A stretch of 64,000 nt of DNA, from positions 124,001-188,000 of IMG/VR virus record IMGVR_UViG_3300042540_001399; one strand, written 5' to 3'. Below are positions 3,347 through 60,623 of this stretch, in pieces. Made by a program: the position numbers and the translations under genes. The notes under the pieces are model-generated. The model made no database searches. It worked only from the letters and a program-made list of their open reading frames with translations, and was not told the DNA's origin. Positions within the stretch are counted from its first letter, which is position 1. Each line of letters opens with the position of its first letter.

Positions 3347-3538
3347 ATGAAATCAATTCCGTTGTATATTGTAATAAACAGTCACTTGAGTGACTCACTT
3401 ATTGAAATTTCCTTCAACCCTGAACTAGCAAGAAATAGGATTCAATTTGTAAAAGTTTTAACAAACATGTTTACCGATCTGACAGAAAGAATAAGTGAAG
3501 AAGAATTGAATAAAATTTGGGATGAAAAAATAAATTAA
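3347..3538 (+). CDS. Hypothetical protein
   Basis: ORF directly behind TAnnTTTG. Confidence 0.6.
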   Translation: MKSIPLYIVINSHLSDSLIEISFNPELARNRIQFVKVLTNMFTDLTERISEEELNKIWDEKIN

Positions 3539-3539
3539 A

Positions 3540-3869
3540 ATGGGAACTTACATTTACACTTACAAGAAAAAATTAGATAAAAAGGCAATTCTTAACGGAC
3601 AAGAAGTTAAGGTTGGTGAAGCTACTTTTTTATGTAAACAAGATTGGTCAGGAAATTACACACCACAAGAAAAACGTGAAATGACAAGAGCCACATGTTT
3701 ACTTGAAAACGATCAACCAGAATACATTACATTTGGTGAAGAAGTTTATAAAAATAATAAACGTGGTATTTGGACTGATGGTAGTGGTTTTTGGTCAGGT
3801 ATTGATCATAAAAAAGATTTTGTTGGAACATTAAAAAAATCGGGTAAAAAATTTGTTATTGAAAAATAA
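3540..3869 (+). CDS. Hypothetical protein
   Basis: Tightly coupled ORF. Confidence 0.6.
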   Translation: MGTYIYTYKKKLDKKAILNGQEVKVGEATFLCKQDWSGNYTPQEKREMTRATCLLENDQPEYITFGEEVYKNNKRGIWTDGSGFWSGIDHKKDFVGTLKKSGKKFVIEK

Positions 3870-3887
3870 TTCATGTATATTTGTATT

Positions 3888-4163
3888 ATGAATAAAGTAG
3901 GTTTCAATATTAAAGTTATGAATGAAAAGTTTGGTGATTTAATCAACGAAACTTTTATGGACCAAGTACAGTTTAAACTTTTTTTAAAAATGGTACACGG
4001 TTGTGTAGAATTAGGCGAAGACCTAACATTCTTCAACGGAGATACTTTCTTTGTAAACATACCAAACAAAATCCTCAAAGAATCTGTTATTGTAACTAAC
4101 GTTAAAGAAATTACAATGACTGAACAAGTTAAAAGTAAAATAGAGGCTCTTGTAACAAAATAG
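3888..4163 (+). CDS. Hypothetical protein
   Basis: Start moved to ATG 3888, 4 nt after TATATTTG (3876-3883). Confidence 0.6.
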   Translation: MNKVGFNIKVMNEKFGDLINETFMDQVQFKLFLKMVHGCVELGEDLTFFNGDTFFVNIPNKILKESVIVTNVKEITMTEQVKSKIEALVTK

Positions 4164-4283
4164 TTTCTTTGTTTCCTATAAAACAAAGTGGTGGAGTCAG
4201 TCCAATTTGGACGGCCTGAAAAAAAGGGATCTTTTACGATCTCTTTTTTTGTTTTATATTAAAATTTTTATTATCTTTGTTTT

Positions 4284-4496
4284 ATGAAATTAACTAAAAA
4301 AGAACAATTATTTTTAGACCAATTAGAAAAAAATGGTGTAGTTTGGAATTTTGACCCTATATACTTAGAAACCAAAGACAAAAAAGGTTTTGACAAGGTA
4401 ATTGGTTATAAATCTTCTTTTATTGCCTACGACTTAATTGAAAAAGGTTTGATTAAAAAAAATCCCGAAAATCCATCAAGTTGGATCAAAGCTTAA
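4284..4496 (+). CDS. Hypothetical protein
   Basis: ATG 4 nt after TATCTTTG. Confidence 0.6.
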   Translation: MKLTKKEQLFLDQLEKNGVVWNFDPIYLETKDKKGFDKVIGYKSSFIAYDLIEKGLIKKNPENPSSWIKA

Positions 4497-58544: not shown

Positions 58545-58564
58545 TAAAATTCTTCCTTTTTATT

Positions 58565-58630
58565 GGGGGCCGGATACCGCGGGTCCCGACTTCGTCGGAA
58601 AAATCGACCGACCGAACCCTTCGGGTTTTT
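58565..58630. other. GC-rich intergenic element with two GAA/TTC triloop hairpins
   Basis: CCGAC-TTC-GTCGG and AACCC-TTC-GGGTT (C-GAA-G on the minus strand); GGGGCC/GGTCCC. Confidence 0.6.
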
Positions 58631-58737
58631 AATAGTTCATATTATATCTTACTTAAGTGAATCTTTCAGAAAAAGGTGGTTTCCCTACTTGACTTAATGG
58701 TATTTACTGTTTATAATTTTATACACAAAAAAAAGTT

Positions 58738-59172
58738 ATGACAATTAAACAAGCACTGAAACAAAAAAATAAACTGATCAAACAGATCGGTGAAAATACA
58801 AAGTTGATGCAAGAGTACAACTCAATTGAAGTTGGAAATGAAAGACCATATAGCTCAAACGAACTATTGGTTGAAATAACTAAAGACACAAAGGAGTTGG
58901 CAAAGTTAAAAACAAAAATTCACATTGCAAACACACCAGTGTTAGAAGACATCTTTTTTATGTCGGAGTTAAAATCAATGACTCAATCACTTAAAAAAAT
59001 GGATTGTACCGAAGGGAAGTCAAATAGAGATAGGTACCGATTGGAAAGTGAAAGTATTAAAACCTCAGAAATATCTTTGGTTAAACGAAATGAAACAATC
59101 AAAGAGTTGGAAGCTCGAATTGAAGAAATCCAAGATCGATTGGATATATTCAACGCAACCACTCAAATTTAA
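58738..59172 (+). CDS. DUF6847/DIP1984-like coiled-coil protein
   Basis: MTIKQALKQKNKL...YNS...LKTKIHIAN...IQDRLDIFNATT. Confidence 0.6.
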   Translation: MTIKQALKQKNKLIKQIGENTKLMQEYNSIEVGNERPYSSNELLVEITKDTKELAKLKTKIHIANTPVLEDIFFMSELKSMTQSLKKMDCTEGKSNRDRYRLESESIKTSEISLVKRNETIKELEARIEEIQDRLDIFNATTQI

Positions 59173-59347
59173 TATGGTTTGTGGGTAGGGTCAAAATGAT
59201 ATGTGTTCTACAATTAGAGACTGAATAGTCAGATAATTGATCGTGATAAAGTAATGGTCCCAAACTCATTATTCAAAGACTCAAAAGTCATTTGATTAAA
59301 ATTTAAAACTCTTGATGACATAATTTTAATCCTCGAAACAAACTATA
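59173..59347 (+). ncRNA. Candidate 175-nt structured RNA in 3' UTR
   Basis: UAUGGUUUGU/ACAAACUAUA and AGGGUCAAAAU..UAUGU/ACAUAAUUUUAAUCCU long-range stems; terminator at 59351-59378. Confidence 0.6.
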
Positions 59348-59400
59348 TGGAACCCTCACAGAAATGTGGGGGTTTTTTAGTTGTAAGATATTTATTTCAT

Positions 59401-60021
59401 ATGAAAATCATTGTTACCGAATCACAGTTAAGACGATACCTTGTTAAAGAATCTACAGAAGAATCTGTTGATTTGGAAATGAATCAATCAATAGACACAA
59501 CAATAAATGAACTACACCCCAACGTTATTCCAAAATTCCAAAAATTAGTAAACGCGTGGAAAGCTAAGGGATACAAATTTAAAATTACCGACGGATTTAG
59601 AACATTTGATGAACAAGAAAACGAATTCCAAAAAGGAACTAGTAAAGCTCGTGGTGGTCTTGGGATTCACAATTATGGTCATGCGATTGATGTTTATATG
59701 TGGAATGGAAAAAATTGGGATAAACCATCTGACGCAATGTTAAAAGTTGCCGTGAACAATGGTTTTGAATCATACGGTCTTTCTTGGGGTTGGGATTTTT
59801 ATCACGTACAATATACAAAAGAATTCACAGGTCAAAAAGGTGGTGATGCTAATTTCATAAAAAAATACGGAAAACAATTAATCGATTCTTATTCCAAAAT
59901 TTCATCTGAAGACAAAAAGAAAATGAAAAAAAATATTGACGCTAAATTTAAACAGGGGAATGGCGGTTACAAAGATTTAATTAATAAATGGTTGGACTTA
60001 TATAGCCCCTTCAAAGATTAA
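59401..60021 (+). CDS. Leader-bearing M15 family peptidoglycan peptidase
   Basis: GFRTFDEQ, HNYGHAID and WDFYHVQ; MKIIVTESQL; start moved to 59401. Confidence 0.8.
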   Translation: MKIIVTESQLRRYLVKESTEESVDLEMNQSIDTTINELHPNVIPKFQKLVNAWKAKGYKFKITDGFRTFDEQENEFQKGTSKARGGLGIHNYGHAIDVYMWNGKNWDKPSDAMLKVAVNNGFESYGLSWGWDFYHVQYTKEFTGQKGGDANFIKKYGKQLIDSYSKISSEDKKKMKKNIDAKFKQGNGGYKDLINKWLDLYSPFKD

Positions 60022-60268: not shown

Positions 60269-60568
60269 ATGGTGAATATACCCACATTTTTACTCAGAAG
60301 ATTTGACGGTCACAAGATAGAAAAGACGATGAAAAAAATTGCCGGTCAAGTTTATTTTGGTACTGACAACAAACAAGAATTCAAAGATGAACTTGTTTAT
60401 AGAACTCTTTCTAATTATTTTTGGACAAAATATAATTTCGATATTACACAACTCAGTGACGATGAATTGATATCTATGAATGAATTAATTTTTAAAATCT
60501 TTGAACCACTTATGAATGTATATTATTCAGGTCTTAAAAAAAATTACCCGAGTCCAAAAACAAATTAA
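60269..60568 (+). CDS. LRR-motif module protein
   Basis: IPTFLLRRFD; TATTTAT at 60257. Confidence 0.65.
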   Translation: MVNIPTFLLRRFDGHKIEKTMKKIAGQVYFGTDNKQEFKDELVYRTLSNYFWTKYNFDITQLSDDELISMNELIFKIFEPLMNVYYSGLKKNYPSPKTN

Positions 60569-60623
60569 TTTTATTTTATTAAAAAATTTTTGAAATTCAT
60601 AAATATTTATAATAAAAATATTT

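What the first reader, a model, noticed from the sequence alone, without database searches (positions are those of the whole stretch)
58738..59378. DUF6847-like coiled-coil gene followed by a 175-nt rod-closed RNA inside the same transcript
Seen: starting 1 nt after the stop, 59173-59347 is closed by a 10-bp stem and a ~15-bp bulged stem whose G.U pairs work on the + strand. The enclosed region has repeated A-rich units (CAAACTCA, AAGACTCAAAA, AAAACTC). A separate terminator follows at 59351-59378. Such a long UTR is rare in this compact genome. Inference: a protein-ncRNA pair, for example a ribonucleoprotein, RNA antitoxin, decoy or autoregulatory element.
Basis: partly seen in the sequence, partly recalled or inferred. 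Interest (0 to 1): 0.7.

Follow-up and report, generated by a model that had tools for sequence, protein, structure and literature searches.

The report
New stable RNA behind DIP1984-like gene
In this jumbo phage, a small gene of unknown function (a distant DIP1984/DUF6847 "septicolysin" relative) is followed by a folded RNA of about 180-210 nt that is conserved, shows compensating base changes, and is the only part of the locus recovered in six environmental RNA libraries; this protein-RNA pair matches no Rfam family, was not found in the papers searched, and has a second version on bacterial chromosomes and plasmids.

Summary
Bases 59173-59347 form a rod-closed RNA on the + strand, directly after the 144-aa gene (58738-59172) and before an intrinsic terminator (59349-59378). 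A near-consensus promoter (58689-58717) makes promoter-gene-RNA-terminator one self-contained unit.

Evidence for the RNA:
- An element of the same design follows relatives of the gene in nearly all ~75 non-redundant loci, down to 33-36% protein identity.
- The rod covaries: 83.7% of cells paired against 73.8% in shuffles, 0 of 500 shuffles as high.
- G.U pairs outnumber A.C pairs 107 to 21, which fits an RNA read from the + strand.
- Six metatranscriptomes hold contigs only over about 59098-59377, while a DNA-like run covers all 5.4 kb.
- The interior holds conserved motifs and a G-poor tract with 7-nt periodicity.
- There is no Rfam match.

The protein has the fold of PDB 3KDQ (DIP1984/DUF6847), whose function is unknown.

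Canonical DIP1984 genes in Bacteroidota, Acinetobacter, Picosynechococcus and Enterococcus plasmids carry their own conserved 3' rod-closed RNA.

Function is unproven. My best guess is a two-part protein-RNA module in which the RNA is a multivalent binding platform. The rivals are a host-factor decoy, a type III-like toxin-antitoxin pair, and a cis-acting 3'UTR.

The parts
58612..58632 (+). Intrinsic terminator of the upstream unit, at the end of an unusually GC-rich stretch (58560-58632). It isolates the cassette on its 5' side.
   Evidence: Terminator scan; sequence.
58689..58717 (+). Sigma-70-type promoter TTGACT-17-TATAAT (11 of 12 matches), the best in the 3 kb scanned.
   Evidence: A TTGAC...N17-18...TATACT/TATAAT motif sits at the same place upstream of the gene in most phage relatives.
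58738..59172 (+). 144-aa protein gene, a distant member of the DIP1984/DUF6847 ('septicolysin') superfamily: a helical bundle plus a beta-hairpin.
59173..59347 (+). Structured RNA element, rod-closed (175 nt between the outermost pairs).
   Evidence: RNA-library contigs.
59173..59182 (+). P1a 5' arm; pairs with 59338-59347.
   Evidence: 92-99% paired across 40 sequences, with AU/GC/GU exchanges.
59338..59347 (+). P1a 3' arm.
59183..59204 (+). Purine-rich internal loop (GGGU opposite CGAA), then the P1b/P1c 5' strands (59187-59191, 59193-59197, 59200-59204).
   Evidence: P1b is 84.8% paired and 6 of its 10 pairs show changes on both sides. P1c is weaker (59.6%).
59318..59337 (+). P1c/P1b 3' strands (59318-59322, 59323-59327, 59329-59333) and the 3' side of the internal loop.
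59219..59230 (+). P2 hairpin (GACU-GAAU-AGUC). Its sequence varies between clades but a hairpin is kept.
   Evidence: all 4 pairs change on both sides; 74.7% paired.
59232..59251 (+). Conserved motif M1: three GAU/UGAU units (GAUAAUUGAUCGUGAUAAAG).
   Evidence: Alignments. Pairing of M1 with the UCAA units is possible but not supported by covariation.
59260..59311 (+). G-poor tract of about seven 6-8-nt units (UYAARAN type: UCAAAGAC, UCAAAAG, UUAAAAU, UUAAAAC), ending in the near-invariant UUAAAACUC. It is predicted to be mostly unpaired.
   Evidence: (lag-7 periodicity; 6% G here against 17% in the whole element).
59349..59378 (+). Intrinsic terminator (12-bp GC-rich stem plus U tract); likely 3' end of the RNA.
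   Evidence: A terminator lies within 12 nt of P1 in 22 of 34 diverse relatives. A head-to-tail junction 59377>59170 occurs in one RNA-library contig.

Best explanation
SHOWN:
- A self-contained cassette (promoter 58689-58717, gene 58738-59172, RNA 59173-59347, terminator 59349-59378) makes a conserved, folded RNA from the 3' end of the transcript of a DIP1984/DUF6847-like gene.
- In natural samples this RNA is recovered where the coding part is not.
- The RNA is a long, imperfect rod (about 25 bp with a conserved purine-rich internal loop). The rod encloses a roughly 110-nt core with a small variable hairpin, three UGAU units, and a G-poor, mostly unpaired tract of about seven heptad-like UYAARAN units.
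- Gene and RNA move through evolution as one unit. They sit beside lysis genes in this phage, inside tRNA clusters in other phages, and at scattered chromosomal sites in a few Bacteroidota.
- The canonical branch of the protein family on bacterial chromosomes and plasmids has its own conserved 3' RNA of the same design.

INFERRED (my commitment):
- The two products act together. The stable RNA, probably released from or outlasting the mRNA, serves as a multivalent platform whose repeated units and internal loop are bound by several copies of a protein. The most economical candidate is the co-encoded DIP1984-like protein, giving a ribonucleoprotein.
- The strong host-type promoter suggests heavy, probably early, expression during infection.
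- What the particle then does (host takeover, counter-defence, RNA metabolism near tRNAs) is unknown.
For: RNA is real and structured:
- Closing rod in the MFE.
- A non-structure-guided MAFFT alignment of 40 unique elements gives 83.7% paired cells against 73.8% in shuffles (0/500). Slid controls reach at most 54.7%. 21 of 29 pairs change on both sides.
- G.U/U.G 107 against A.C/C.A 21.
- Across 24 diverse loci, cognate 5'/3' flanks pair at -23.0 kcal/mol against -14.1 for non-cognate flanks, and the cognate partner is best in 19 of 24.
- No conserved ORF lies inside the element.

Expression:
- In six metatranscriptomes (X1, X2, X3, X5, X6, X7), the only contigs that lie well on the 1.6-5.4 kb laid fall within 59098-59377. 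The exceptions are 39-base partial matches of longer, otherwise unlike contigs at 58737-58775 (X3, X5) and 60555-60591 (X7). A seventh run, X4, holds only a divergent contig over 59106-59196 plus one contig inside the gene (58744-58894).
- The DNA-like run X21 covers the whole stretch.

Linkage:
- Model R1 finds the element directly behind the gene in 59 of 72 non-redundant sources. The remaining sources show the same rod and motifs on inspection.
- In L072/L077/L085 a small ORF is inserted between gene and RNA, yet the RNA stays intact.
- In a pattern scan of IMG/VR that ignores the gene, all 7 model-confirmed hits lie just downstream of a family gene.
- The element is single-copy in the genome.

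Cassette: promoter and terminators; promoter conserved in relatives.

Family-wide second RNA type: (R2 hits the Acinetobacter plasmid at E 1.6e-8 and Picosynechococcus at 6e-5). Its P1b covaries across phyla: AGUAC:GUACU, AGCAC:GUGCU, AGUGU:ACACU.

Platform idea: conserved primary sequence in M1 and the heptad tract; lag-7 periodicity in 33 of 36 sequences; the tract is more unpaired than the arms in 33 of 34.
Against: - No direct evidence that the protein binds RNA. The complex job was not folded.
- The protein is near neutral (pI 7.8), and its fold (3KDQ) has no known function or RNA-binding precedent.
- Fold relatives are listed in AlphaFold DB beyond this family, so the protein may have an RNA-independent role.
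- Linkage could reflect shared regulation rather than contact.
- Logan contigs show presence, not quantitative abundance, and strain variation breaks contigs, so the exact RNA ends are uncertain. Contigs start at 59098-59186, and one junction suggests 59170.
- Model R2 of the canonical RNA does not detect the phage-type RNA, so homology of the two RNA types is not demonstrated.
Confidence: 0.42

Rival explanations
1. Host-factor decoy or sponge that works without the neighbouring protein. It would be an abundant rod-shaped RNA, 6S-, Y- or CsrB/CrcZ-like in logic, whose repeated single-stranded units or bubble sequester a host protein (RNA polymerase, an RNA-binding protein, Rho, S1 and so on) during infection. 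The gene would simply share the transcript.
For: - Strong host-type promoter and high apparent RNA level.
- Closing rod plus a large interior with a possible terminal irregular hairpin, which resembles the 6S outline.
- G-poor tract with regularly spaced repeats, as in protein-sponge RNAs.
- The protein has no known RNA-binding features.
Against: - A decoy alone does not explain obligate linkage to one protein family across very different genomes and contexts.
- No match to 6S, 6S-Flavo, Y RNA or any other Rfam model even at E<=10.
- The putative terminal stem M1:M2 lacks covariation.
- No Ro/TROVE gene in the phage.
- Hosts range over several phyla for the canonical type, so a single host target is harder to picture.
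Confidence: 0.2
2. Cis-acting 3'UTR. The rod and terminator protect the mRNA from 3' exonucleases or tune its translation or decay. The RNA seen in libraries would be a nuclease-resistant decay remnant with no role in trans.
For: - It lies in the same transcript, with the rod starting at the stop codon.
- Several RNA-library contigs run from up to 75 nt inside the coding region into the element.
- Structured 3' ends commonly outlast mRNA bodies (general knowledge of bacterial mRNA decay).
Against: - The unpaired interior (M1, heptads, UUAAAACUC) is conserved in sequence more strongly than the stems, down to 36% protein identity. A mere stability element does not need that.
- The element survives insertion of an extra ORF between gene and RNA.
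- In clade D it is followed by tRNAs instead of a terminator.
- A plain terminator already follows it.
Confidence: 0.15
3. Type III-like toxin-antitoxin or abortive-infection module. The protein would be toxic and the abundant RNA would neutralise it by binding. This would be a special case of a protein-RNA complex with addiction or defence logic.
For: - Two-part module, patchy and mobile. The phage-type family was found in 1 of 401 Bacteroidota genomes sampled, the query genome itself. Canonical DUF6847 was found in 3 of 401, and in 1 of 301 for the order.
- 370 plasmids carry the gene, 341 of them Acinetobacter.
- It is mostly viral in the ESM Atlas.
- A McrBC neighbour in L094.
- The RNA appears to exceed the mRNA.
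Against: - The layout is the reverse of known type III systems, where the RNA comes first with a terminator between.
- There are no 34-36-nt tandem repeats.
- The protein is a helical bundle, not a ToxN/Kid-like endoribonuclease.
- No toxicity data, and no hit in Pfam or NCBIfam toxin models. The PADLOC library was not searched.
Confidence: 0.12
4. A DNA-level element (origin, packaging or recombination site, iterons) or a chance inverted repeat.
For: Short repeats flanked by an inverted repeat in AT-rich DNA. The single-sequence fold z-scores are similar on both strands.
Against: - Strand-specific G.U excess.
- Fixed orientation behind the gene and ahead of a terminator.
- Selective recovery in RNA libraries.
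- Compensatory changes in arms that share no sequence between clades.
Confidence: 0.02

Closest known systems
3'UTR-derived small RNAs of bacteria (e.g. CpxQ from cpxP, SroC, DapZ)
   Same: It is made from the 3' end of a protein-coding transcript, shares that mRNA's intrinsic terminator, and accumulates beyond the mRNA. The protein and the RNA from one locus may serve one pathway.
   Different: It is much larger and more structured (a 25-bp closing rod with a 110-nt core). It is conserved across phages and, in a second version, across phyla. It has no known chaperone or target, and its 5' end mechanism is unknown.
Type III toxin-antitoxin systems (ToxIN, CptIN, TenpIN)
   Same: A protein gene plus a cis-encoded non-coding RNA with short internal repeats. 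The unit is mobile and patchy, and is found on phages and plasmids.
   Different: The gene order is reversed. The repeats are 7 nt inside a rod-closed fold rather than 34-36-nt tandem units. The protein fold is unrelated to ToxN. Toxicity is untested.
6S RNA and bacterial Y RNAs (YrlA)
   Same: About 180-200 nt, with the 5' and 3' ends paired into a long imperfect rod carrying conserved internal loops. It is abundant and stable. Some canonical-type copies contain a T-arm-like hairpin (L114, L150), and several copies sit next to tRNA genes.
   Different: No match to Rfam 6S, 6S-Flavo or Y RNA models. There is no covariation for a terminal stem and bubble, and no Ro/TROVE gene in the phage. The tight linkage is to a different protein family.
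OMEGA systems (TnpB with its reRNA/omega RNA)
   Same: A structured RNA encoded at or just beyond the 3' end of its partner protein gene; it travels with that gene on mobile DNA and forms a complex with the protein.
   Different: The protein here is a 144-aa helical bundle with no nuclease domain. There are no transposon ends and no guide segment is evident.
PDB 3KDQ / DIP1984 family (Pfam DUF6847, NCBIfam NF038048; older annotation 'septicolysin')
   Same: Same fold (TM 0.82, Z 13.5) and a full-length weak sequence match. Canonical members also carry a conserved 3' rod-closed RNA.
   Different: The window protein scores below both curated cut-offs. Its RNA is not detected by the model of the canonical RNA. 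No function is known for the family; the toxin-like name comes from annotation, not from a test that I could find.

Membership tests
Pfam DUF6847 / NCBIfam DIP1984 family (protein) | Score over the curated cut-off of the family model | tested here: not met
   Pfam 16.7 bits against a cut-off of 27. NCBIfam NF038048 24.3 bits against a cut-off of 70. Both alignments are full-length. 40 of 72 close relatives hit DUF6847 at E<=0.01, best 7e-11. The Saprospiraceae copy scores 29.7 bits.
Pfam DUF6847 / NCBIfam DIP1984 family (protein) | Same three-dimensional fold as the family's solved member 3KDQ | tested here: met
   Model pLDDT 96.4. Foldseek TM 0.82, probability 1.00. VIA-align Z 13.5 over 140 residues, next best 9.2.
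Any Rfam 15 RNA family (including 6S, 6S-Flavo, Y RNA, ToxI, tRNA-like) | Covariance-model match at gathering score | tested here: not met
   No hit in the window at gathering threshold. Only sub-threshold chance-level hits at E<=10 in 59100-59420. No hits on related loci other than tRNAs and one sub-threshold chance-level match.
Type III toxin-antitoxin | RNA gene of tandem 34-36-nt repeats upstream of the toxin, separated by a terminator | tested here: not met
   The RNA is downstream. Its repeats are about 7 nt inside one fold, and the terminator follows both gene and RNA.
Type III toxin-antitoxin | Toxin is a sequence-specific endoribonuclease neutralised by its RNA | not testable with these tools
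   The fold is unrelated to ToxN. Toxicity and cleavage need experiments.
6S RNA | Closing stem, large central bubble and terminal stem supported by covariation; binds RNA polymerase holoenzyme | tested here: inconclusive
   The closing stem is supported. The candidate terminal stem M1:M2 does not clearly exceed the shuffles (3 pairs with double changes against 2.7 expected). Binding is not testable here.
Bacterial Y RNA (YrlA) | Encoded near or with a Ro (TROVE) protein; tRNA-like module | tested here: not met
   No TROVE match in the 290,887-bp genome. ARAGORN finds no tRNA-like gene in the window. T-arm-like hairpins were seen only in two canonical-type copies.
3'UTR-derived sRNA | Shares the terminator of the upstream mRNA and accumulates as a shorter species | tested here: inconclusive
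   The layout fits. RNA-library contigs are confined to the 3' part. A junction suggests ends at 59170 and 59377. Contigs are not read-level end maps, and no Northern or dRNA-seq data exist.

The most novel reading that the evidence does not exclude
The DIP1984/DUF6847 ('septicolysin') superfamily as a whole is the protein half of a previously unrecognised, mobile ribonucleoprotein system. Each gene would carry its own roughly 170-210-nt rod-closed partner RNA with a heptad-repeat tract, in at least two RNA types: a phage type as in this window, and a canonical type in Bacteroidota, Acinetobacter, cyanobacterial and enterococcal replicons. The complex would carry out a new function in phage-host or plasmid-host conflict, or in RNA metabolism near tRNA operons.
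Probability: 0.35. Interest if true: 0.9.

Novelty: new variant of a known kind. Interest (0 to 1): 0.78.

Why it matters
This is a well-supported new class of structured RNA with an obligate protein partner of unknown function.

- It is abundant enough in lakes and rivers to be the only piece of a 290-kb phage locus assembled from RNA libraries.
- The same design recurs behind canonical DIP1984 genes in several phyla and on 370 sequenced plasmids, 341 of them from Acinetobacter, where the gene has long been labelled 'septicolysin' without evidence that I could find.
- The pairing turns a domain of unknown function that already has a crystal structure (3KDQ) into a testable RNA-linked system.
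- It gives cultured, tractable carriers in which to test it: Flavobacteriaceae, Picosynechococcus, Deinococcus and laboratory hosts.
- It adds a case to the short list of mobile protein-RNA modules (type III toxin-antitoxins, retrons, OMEGA) that have repeatedly yielded new biology.

Tried and rejected
- Rfam at gathering and permissive thresholds on the window and on related loci: nothing relevant.
- tRNA/tmRNA scan of the window: none.
- Phage nucleotide search: no match.
- Second copies in the genome by BLAST and by covariance model: none.
- RNAalifold on the first, too-divergent alignment found only the terminator.
- A naive stacked-column covariation scan was defeated by indels.
- The M1:M2 'terminal stem' (P3) is compatible with the sequences but does not clearly exceed the shuffles, so I do not claim it.
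- Complex prediction of protein x2 plus RNA: NOT FOLDED by the tool. This is no evidence either way.
- Fold searches beyond 3KDQ (PDB, wide VIA, AFDB clusters, BFVD) gave only generic helical matches and no functional lead.
- Neighbouring genes across clades are mostly unknown PHROGs and show no constant partner. An endolysin lies nearby in two clades, but of different families and on different sides, so I treat it as coincidence.
- Ro/TROVE is absent from the phage.
- An internal sigma-70 promoter for the RNA: none convincing by eye or in the scan.
- Literature: 'DUF6847' gave 0 papers. 'DIP1984', '3KDQ', 'septicolysin' and 'p2AB5075 sRNA' gave nothing about an RNA.
- A catalogue of more than 8,000 unnamed candidate structured RNAs from IMG/VR exists (PMC10690425). 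It might contain part of this element; I could not check.
- Model R2 of the canonical RNA does not detect the phage-type RNA, so I do not claim homology of the two RNA types.
- Ideas of complementarity to the 16S 5' end or to the tRNA-Gln anticodon loop, and of a Rho-binding site, were considered by eye only. They are not supported by any test.
Full report
**Where the window lies.** It is bases 124001-188000 of a single 290,887-bp contig with 31% G+C. The tools class it as a virus record about 99% complete. Near-identical IMG/VR contigs exist (L001, L002). It is a jumbo phage from freshwater-type samples.

**The observation.**
- The ORF 58738-59172 encodes 144 aa.
- Immediately after its TAA, the minimum-free-energy fold of 59173-59347 pairs the first ten bases with the last ten. 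It then continues through a 4x4 internal loop into three further short helices, about 25 bp in all.
- A separate GC-rich terminator hairpin with a U run lies at 59349-59376/8.
- For the single sequence the fold is only about 2 sd better than shuffles, and the opposite strand is nearly as good. The sequence alone would not prove anything.

**The cassette.**
- The best sigma-70-type promoter in the surrounding 3 kb (TTGACT-17-TATAAT, 11 of 12) sits at 58689-58717, 20 nt ahead of the start codon.
- A terminator at 58612-58624 closes the preceding unit.
- A TTGAC...N17-18...TATACT/TATAAT motif is found at the same place in most phage relatives.
- Promoter, gene, RNA and terminator therefore form one insulated unit.

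**The protein.**
- Pfam gives only a weak but end-to-end match to DUF6847 (E 0.007). NCBIfam gives the same for NF038048, 'DIP1984 family protein' (E 2.9e-5, 24 bits against a cut-off of 70).
- The family around the window protein is large and of very uniform length. A profile search found 1,689 representatives at 50% clustering with E<=1e-3, nearly all 140-150 aa.
- 40 of 72 sampled members hit DUF6847, best 7e-11.
- AlphaFold2 with that alignment gives pLDDT 96.4: four helices with a small beta-hairpin between the third and fourth.
- The only meaningful structural match is PDB 3KDQ, a functionally unknown protein of Corynebacterium diphtheriae (locus DIP1984): TM 0.82 and Z 13.5, against 9.2 for the next hit.
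- Nothing in PDB, AFDB or BFVD suggests a function.
- ESM Atlas clusters of the family are 86-98% viral. One bacterial DUF6847 cluster carries the automatic name 'putative septicolysin'. I found no experimental basis for that name in the searchable literature.
- The predicted pI is 7.8.

**The RNA is conserved behind the gene.**
- Two scans of IMG/VR and one of GTDB genomes returned 97 loci with relatives of the gene, at 100% down to 33% identity. These give 75 distinct downstream sequences.
- Reading them shows the same design everywhere: complementary arms starting at or within a few bases of the stop codon, and a conserved interior.
- In 22 of 34 diverse cases a terminator lies within 12 nt of the 3' arm.
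- Covariance model R1, built from 22 sequences, finds the element directly behind the gene, on the same strand, in 59 of 72 non-redundant sources. It finds the element nowhere else in the window or genome.
- The most distant clades are missed by R1 but show the rod and motifs on folding.
- In L072, L077 and L085 a roughly 70-codon Cys-rich ORF has been inserted between gene and RNA, and the RNA is intact.
- In clade L036-L040 the pair lies inside a phage tRNA cluster, and tRNAs rather than a terminator follow the RNA.

**Structure tests.**
- I projected four helices of the window's fold (P1a, P1b, P1c, P2) onto A6, a plain MAFFT alignment of 40 unique elements. 83.7% of cells are standard pairs against 73.8 +/- 0.8% when 3' partners are shuffled (0/500). 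Sliding the partners by 1-3 columns gives at most 54.7%. 21 of 29 pairs change on both sides.
- P1a is 92-99% paired with AU/GC/GU exchanges. P1b is 85% paired. P2 is 75% paired and all four of its pairs covary. P1c is weak (60%).
- In these pairs G.U/U.G occurs 107 times and A.C/C.A 21 times. This is as expected if the + strand is the folded RNA.
- As a test independent of my trimming, I took the first 45 nt after the stop and the 60 nt after the last conserved motif in 24 diverse loci. Cognate pairs duplex at -23.0 kcal/mol on average and non-cognate pairs at -14.1. The cognate partner is the best of 24 in 19 cases.
- Arms in different clades share no sequence (for example UAUGGUUUGU, AGAGUAGAGUU, GGAGGGUCGGG, GGAGAACUUG) yet stay complementary.
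- There is no conserved ORF inside. The median longest ORF is 27 aa and the minimum 7 aa.

**The interior.** It is conserved in sequence more than the stems are. It contains:
- three GAU/UGAU units (59232-59251);
- a GGUCCC-type motif;
- a G-poor tract (59260-59311) of units such as UCAAAGAC, UCAAAAG, UUAAAAU and UUAAAAC, ending in the almost invariant UUAAAACUC.

Further measurements on the tract:
- Autocorrelation over the 3' half of the core in 36 sequences peaks at lag 7 (+0.128 over shuffles, 33 of 36 positive), with a shoulder at lag 8 and an echo at lag 14.
- The tract has 6% G in the window against 17% for the whole element.
- It is predicted to be more unpaired than the arms in 33 of 34 sequences.
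- Pairing of the UGAU units with the UCAA units into an irregular hairpin is possible, but its pairs hardly vary and it does not clearly exceed the shuffles. I leave it open.

**It is an RNA in nature.**
- Public metatranscriptomes from lakes and rivers hold 5-17% of the sampled words of a 1.1-kb query.
- When contigs of seven such runs were laid on 1.6 or 5.4 kb around the locus, six of them (X1, X2, X3, X5, X6, X7) held contigs of 117-239 nt that lie between 59098 and 59377. Nothing else lay well on the stretch. The exceptions are 39-base partial matches of longer, unrelated contigs at 58737-58775 (X3, X5) and 60555-60591 (X7).
- X4 held a divergent contig over 59106-59196 and one contig inside the gene (58744-58894).
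- A run of unrecorded type that behaves like DNA (X21) covered the whole 5.4 kb.
- One X6 contig joins 59377 to 59170 through one extra G. Such a head-to-tail junction is what template switching at the ends of an abundant RNA would give. It suggests a 5' end at the stop codon and a 3' end in the terminator's U tract.
- Other contigs begin at 59098-59161, and three begin at 59113/59114. Longer forms therefore exist, or strain variants break the assemblies there.
- These are assemblies, not reads. They show presence and relative prominence, not exact ends.

**Linkage in both directions.**
- A pattern for two interior motifs, which ignores the gene, matched 14 IMG/VR stretches. 7 of them lie directly downstream of a family gene (hmmsearch E<=1e-53). 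The two of these that were searched with R1 (L102, L106) matched at that place. The other 7 lack both the gene and any R1 match at the pattern and are chance hits.
- Conversely, I found no family gene with enough downstream sequence that lacks a rod-closed element.

**Distribution.**
- The phage-type family is rare in bacteria: 1 of 401 Bacteroidota genomes sampled, the query genome itself.
- The few bacterial copies sit in unrelated contexts: PRPP synthetase with two tRNA-Leu genes and an AAA ATPase; a beta-lactamase-family protein and T9SS cargo proteins; a PKD/T9SS protein and McrBC.

**A second RNA type behind canonical DIP1984 genes.**
- Searching Bacteroidota with Pfam DUF6847 itself found two canonical genes. 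Both are followed by a rod-closed element.
- Fifty metagenomic loci of canonical relatives show a highly conserved element of about 180 nt.
- RNAalifold gives a 10-bp P1, an asymmetric loop (GGCG opposite GA), a 6-bp P1b (AGUACC:GGUACU) and inner helices. G.U intermediates occur on the + strand.
- It also carries a run of UAC-containing heptads (such as cUUACaa, aUUACaa, gUGUACa) before the 3' arm.
- tblastn finds the gene on 370 PLSDB plasmids: 341 Acinetobacter (next to ZnuD2 in the one 8.7-kb plasmid inspected), 17 Enterococcus, and others from Picosynechococcus, Mycobacterium and Streptomyces.
- In the three plasmids I opened, an unannotated gap of 270-370 nt follows the gene. It contains the same design, with P1b covarying between phyla: AGUAC:GUACU in Acinetobacter, AGUGU:ACACU in Picosynechococcus, AGCAC:GUGCU in Enterococcus.
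- Model R2, built only from Bacteroidota, hits the Acinetobacter element at E 1.6e-8, Picosynechococcus at 6e-5 and other metagenomic copies at 1e-4 to 0.09. Every hit lies right behind the gene.
- R2 does not detect the phage-type RNA. I therefore call the two RNA types positional and architectural counterparts, not proven homologues.
- Neither type matches Rfam.

**How it most likely works.**
- Shown: a conserved folded RNA is made from the 3' end of this gene's transcript. It is prominent in RNA libraries, and it is inherited with the gene as one mobile unit.
- Inferred: the two products cooperate. The features under strongest sequence constraint are unpaired or loop nucleotides arranged as repeats (three UGAU, about seven heptads) plus a purine-rich internal loop. 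That is what one expects of a platform recognised by several copies of a protein. The constant companion is the DIP1984-like protein, so a ribonucleoprotein is the most economical reading (about 0.4).
- Other readings: a decoy for a host factor (about 0.2), a purely cis-acting 3'UTR (about 0.15) and a type III-like toxin-antitoxin or abortive-infection pair (about 0.12) remain open. A DNA-level element is very unlikely.

**Novelty.**
- There is no Rfam family, and no paper in the searchable library mentions DUF6847 or links DIP1984/'septicolysin' to an RNA.
- A 2023 catalogue of thousands of unnamed candidate structured RNAs from IMG/VR (PMC10690425) may include fragments of it.
- I rate it a new variant of a known kind: a stable structured RNA born from a 3'UTR and coupled to a protein gene. 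There is a real chance (about 0.35) that it marks a new ribonucleoprotein system spanning phages, plasmids and several phyla.

Noticed in passing
L115, L117-L147, L114, L167 (Acinetobacter plasmid NZ_CP027529.1), L168 (Picosynechococcus plasmid), L169 (Enterococcus plasmid): Canonical DIP1984/DUF6847 genes carry their own conserved rod-closed RNA of about 170-200 nt right after the stop: P1, a GGCG/GA loop, a covarying AGUACC:GGUACU helix, and UAC heptads. It is not in Rfam. 370 plasmids carry the gene, 341 of them Acinetobacter.
   Followed up: partly
window 57884, 58215, 59401, 61455; and 56813, 60624: Several neighbouring ORFs, including the M15/VanY-type endolysin (59401-60021), begin with the same N-terminal motif MKIIITE(S/N/R)QL. 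Two others share MExNRFKQLLESxLGxVxPLISEQ. These may be a shared targeting or packaging signal, or paralogous modules.
   Followed up: no
window 58560-58632: An unusually GC-rich stretch of about 70 nt in a 31% G+C genome, ending in the terminator at 58612-58624. It may be a further structured element between transcription units.
   Followed up: no
L072, L077, L085 (about 3436-3650): A Cys-rich (zinc-ribbon-like) ORF of about 70 codons is inserted between the gene's stop codon and the RNA, leaving the RNA intact.
   Followed up: no
L036-L040; L089:2467-2907; L114:1187-1398: tRNA genes lie immediately next to the gene-RNA pair in three unrelated settings: phage tRNA clusters on both sides, two tRNA-Leu genes, and tRNA-Gly plus tRNA-Val. 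Two canonical-type RNAs (L114, L150) contain a T-arm-like hairpin (GGGUUCGAUCCC type).
   Followed up: partly
L114, L150, L154, L155, L158, L168, just 3' of the RNA: A conserved G-rich motif, GAGGGTGGGAA(A/C)GGGG, follows the RNA in the GC-richer DIP1984 loci. It could be a G-quadruplex-like or protein-binding element.
   Followed up: no
window 59170/59377 (run X6): One metatranscriptome contig joins 59377 to 59170 head-to-tail with one extra G. It could be a template-switch artefact marking the RNA ends, or a circular or concatemeric form.
   Followed up: no
L064, L073, L079 and others, about 3630-4370 on the minus strand: In several phage clades a conserved gene of about 230 aa with no family match converges on the same terminator from the opposite strand.
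   Followed up: partly
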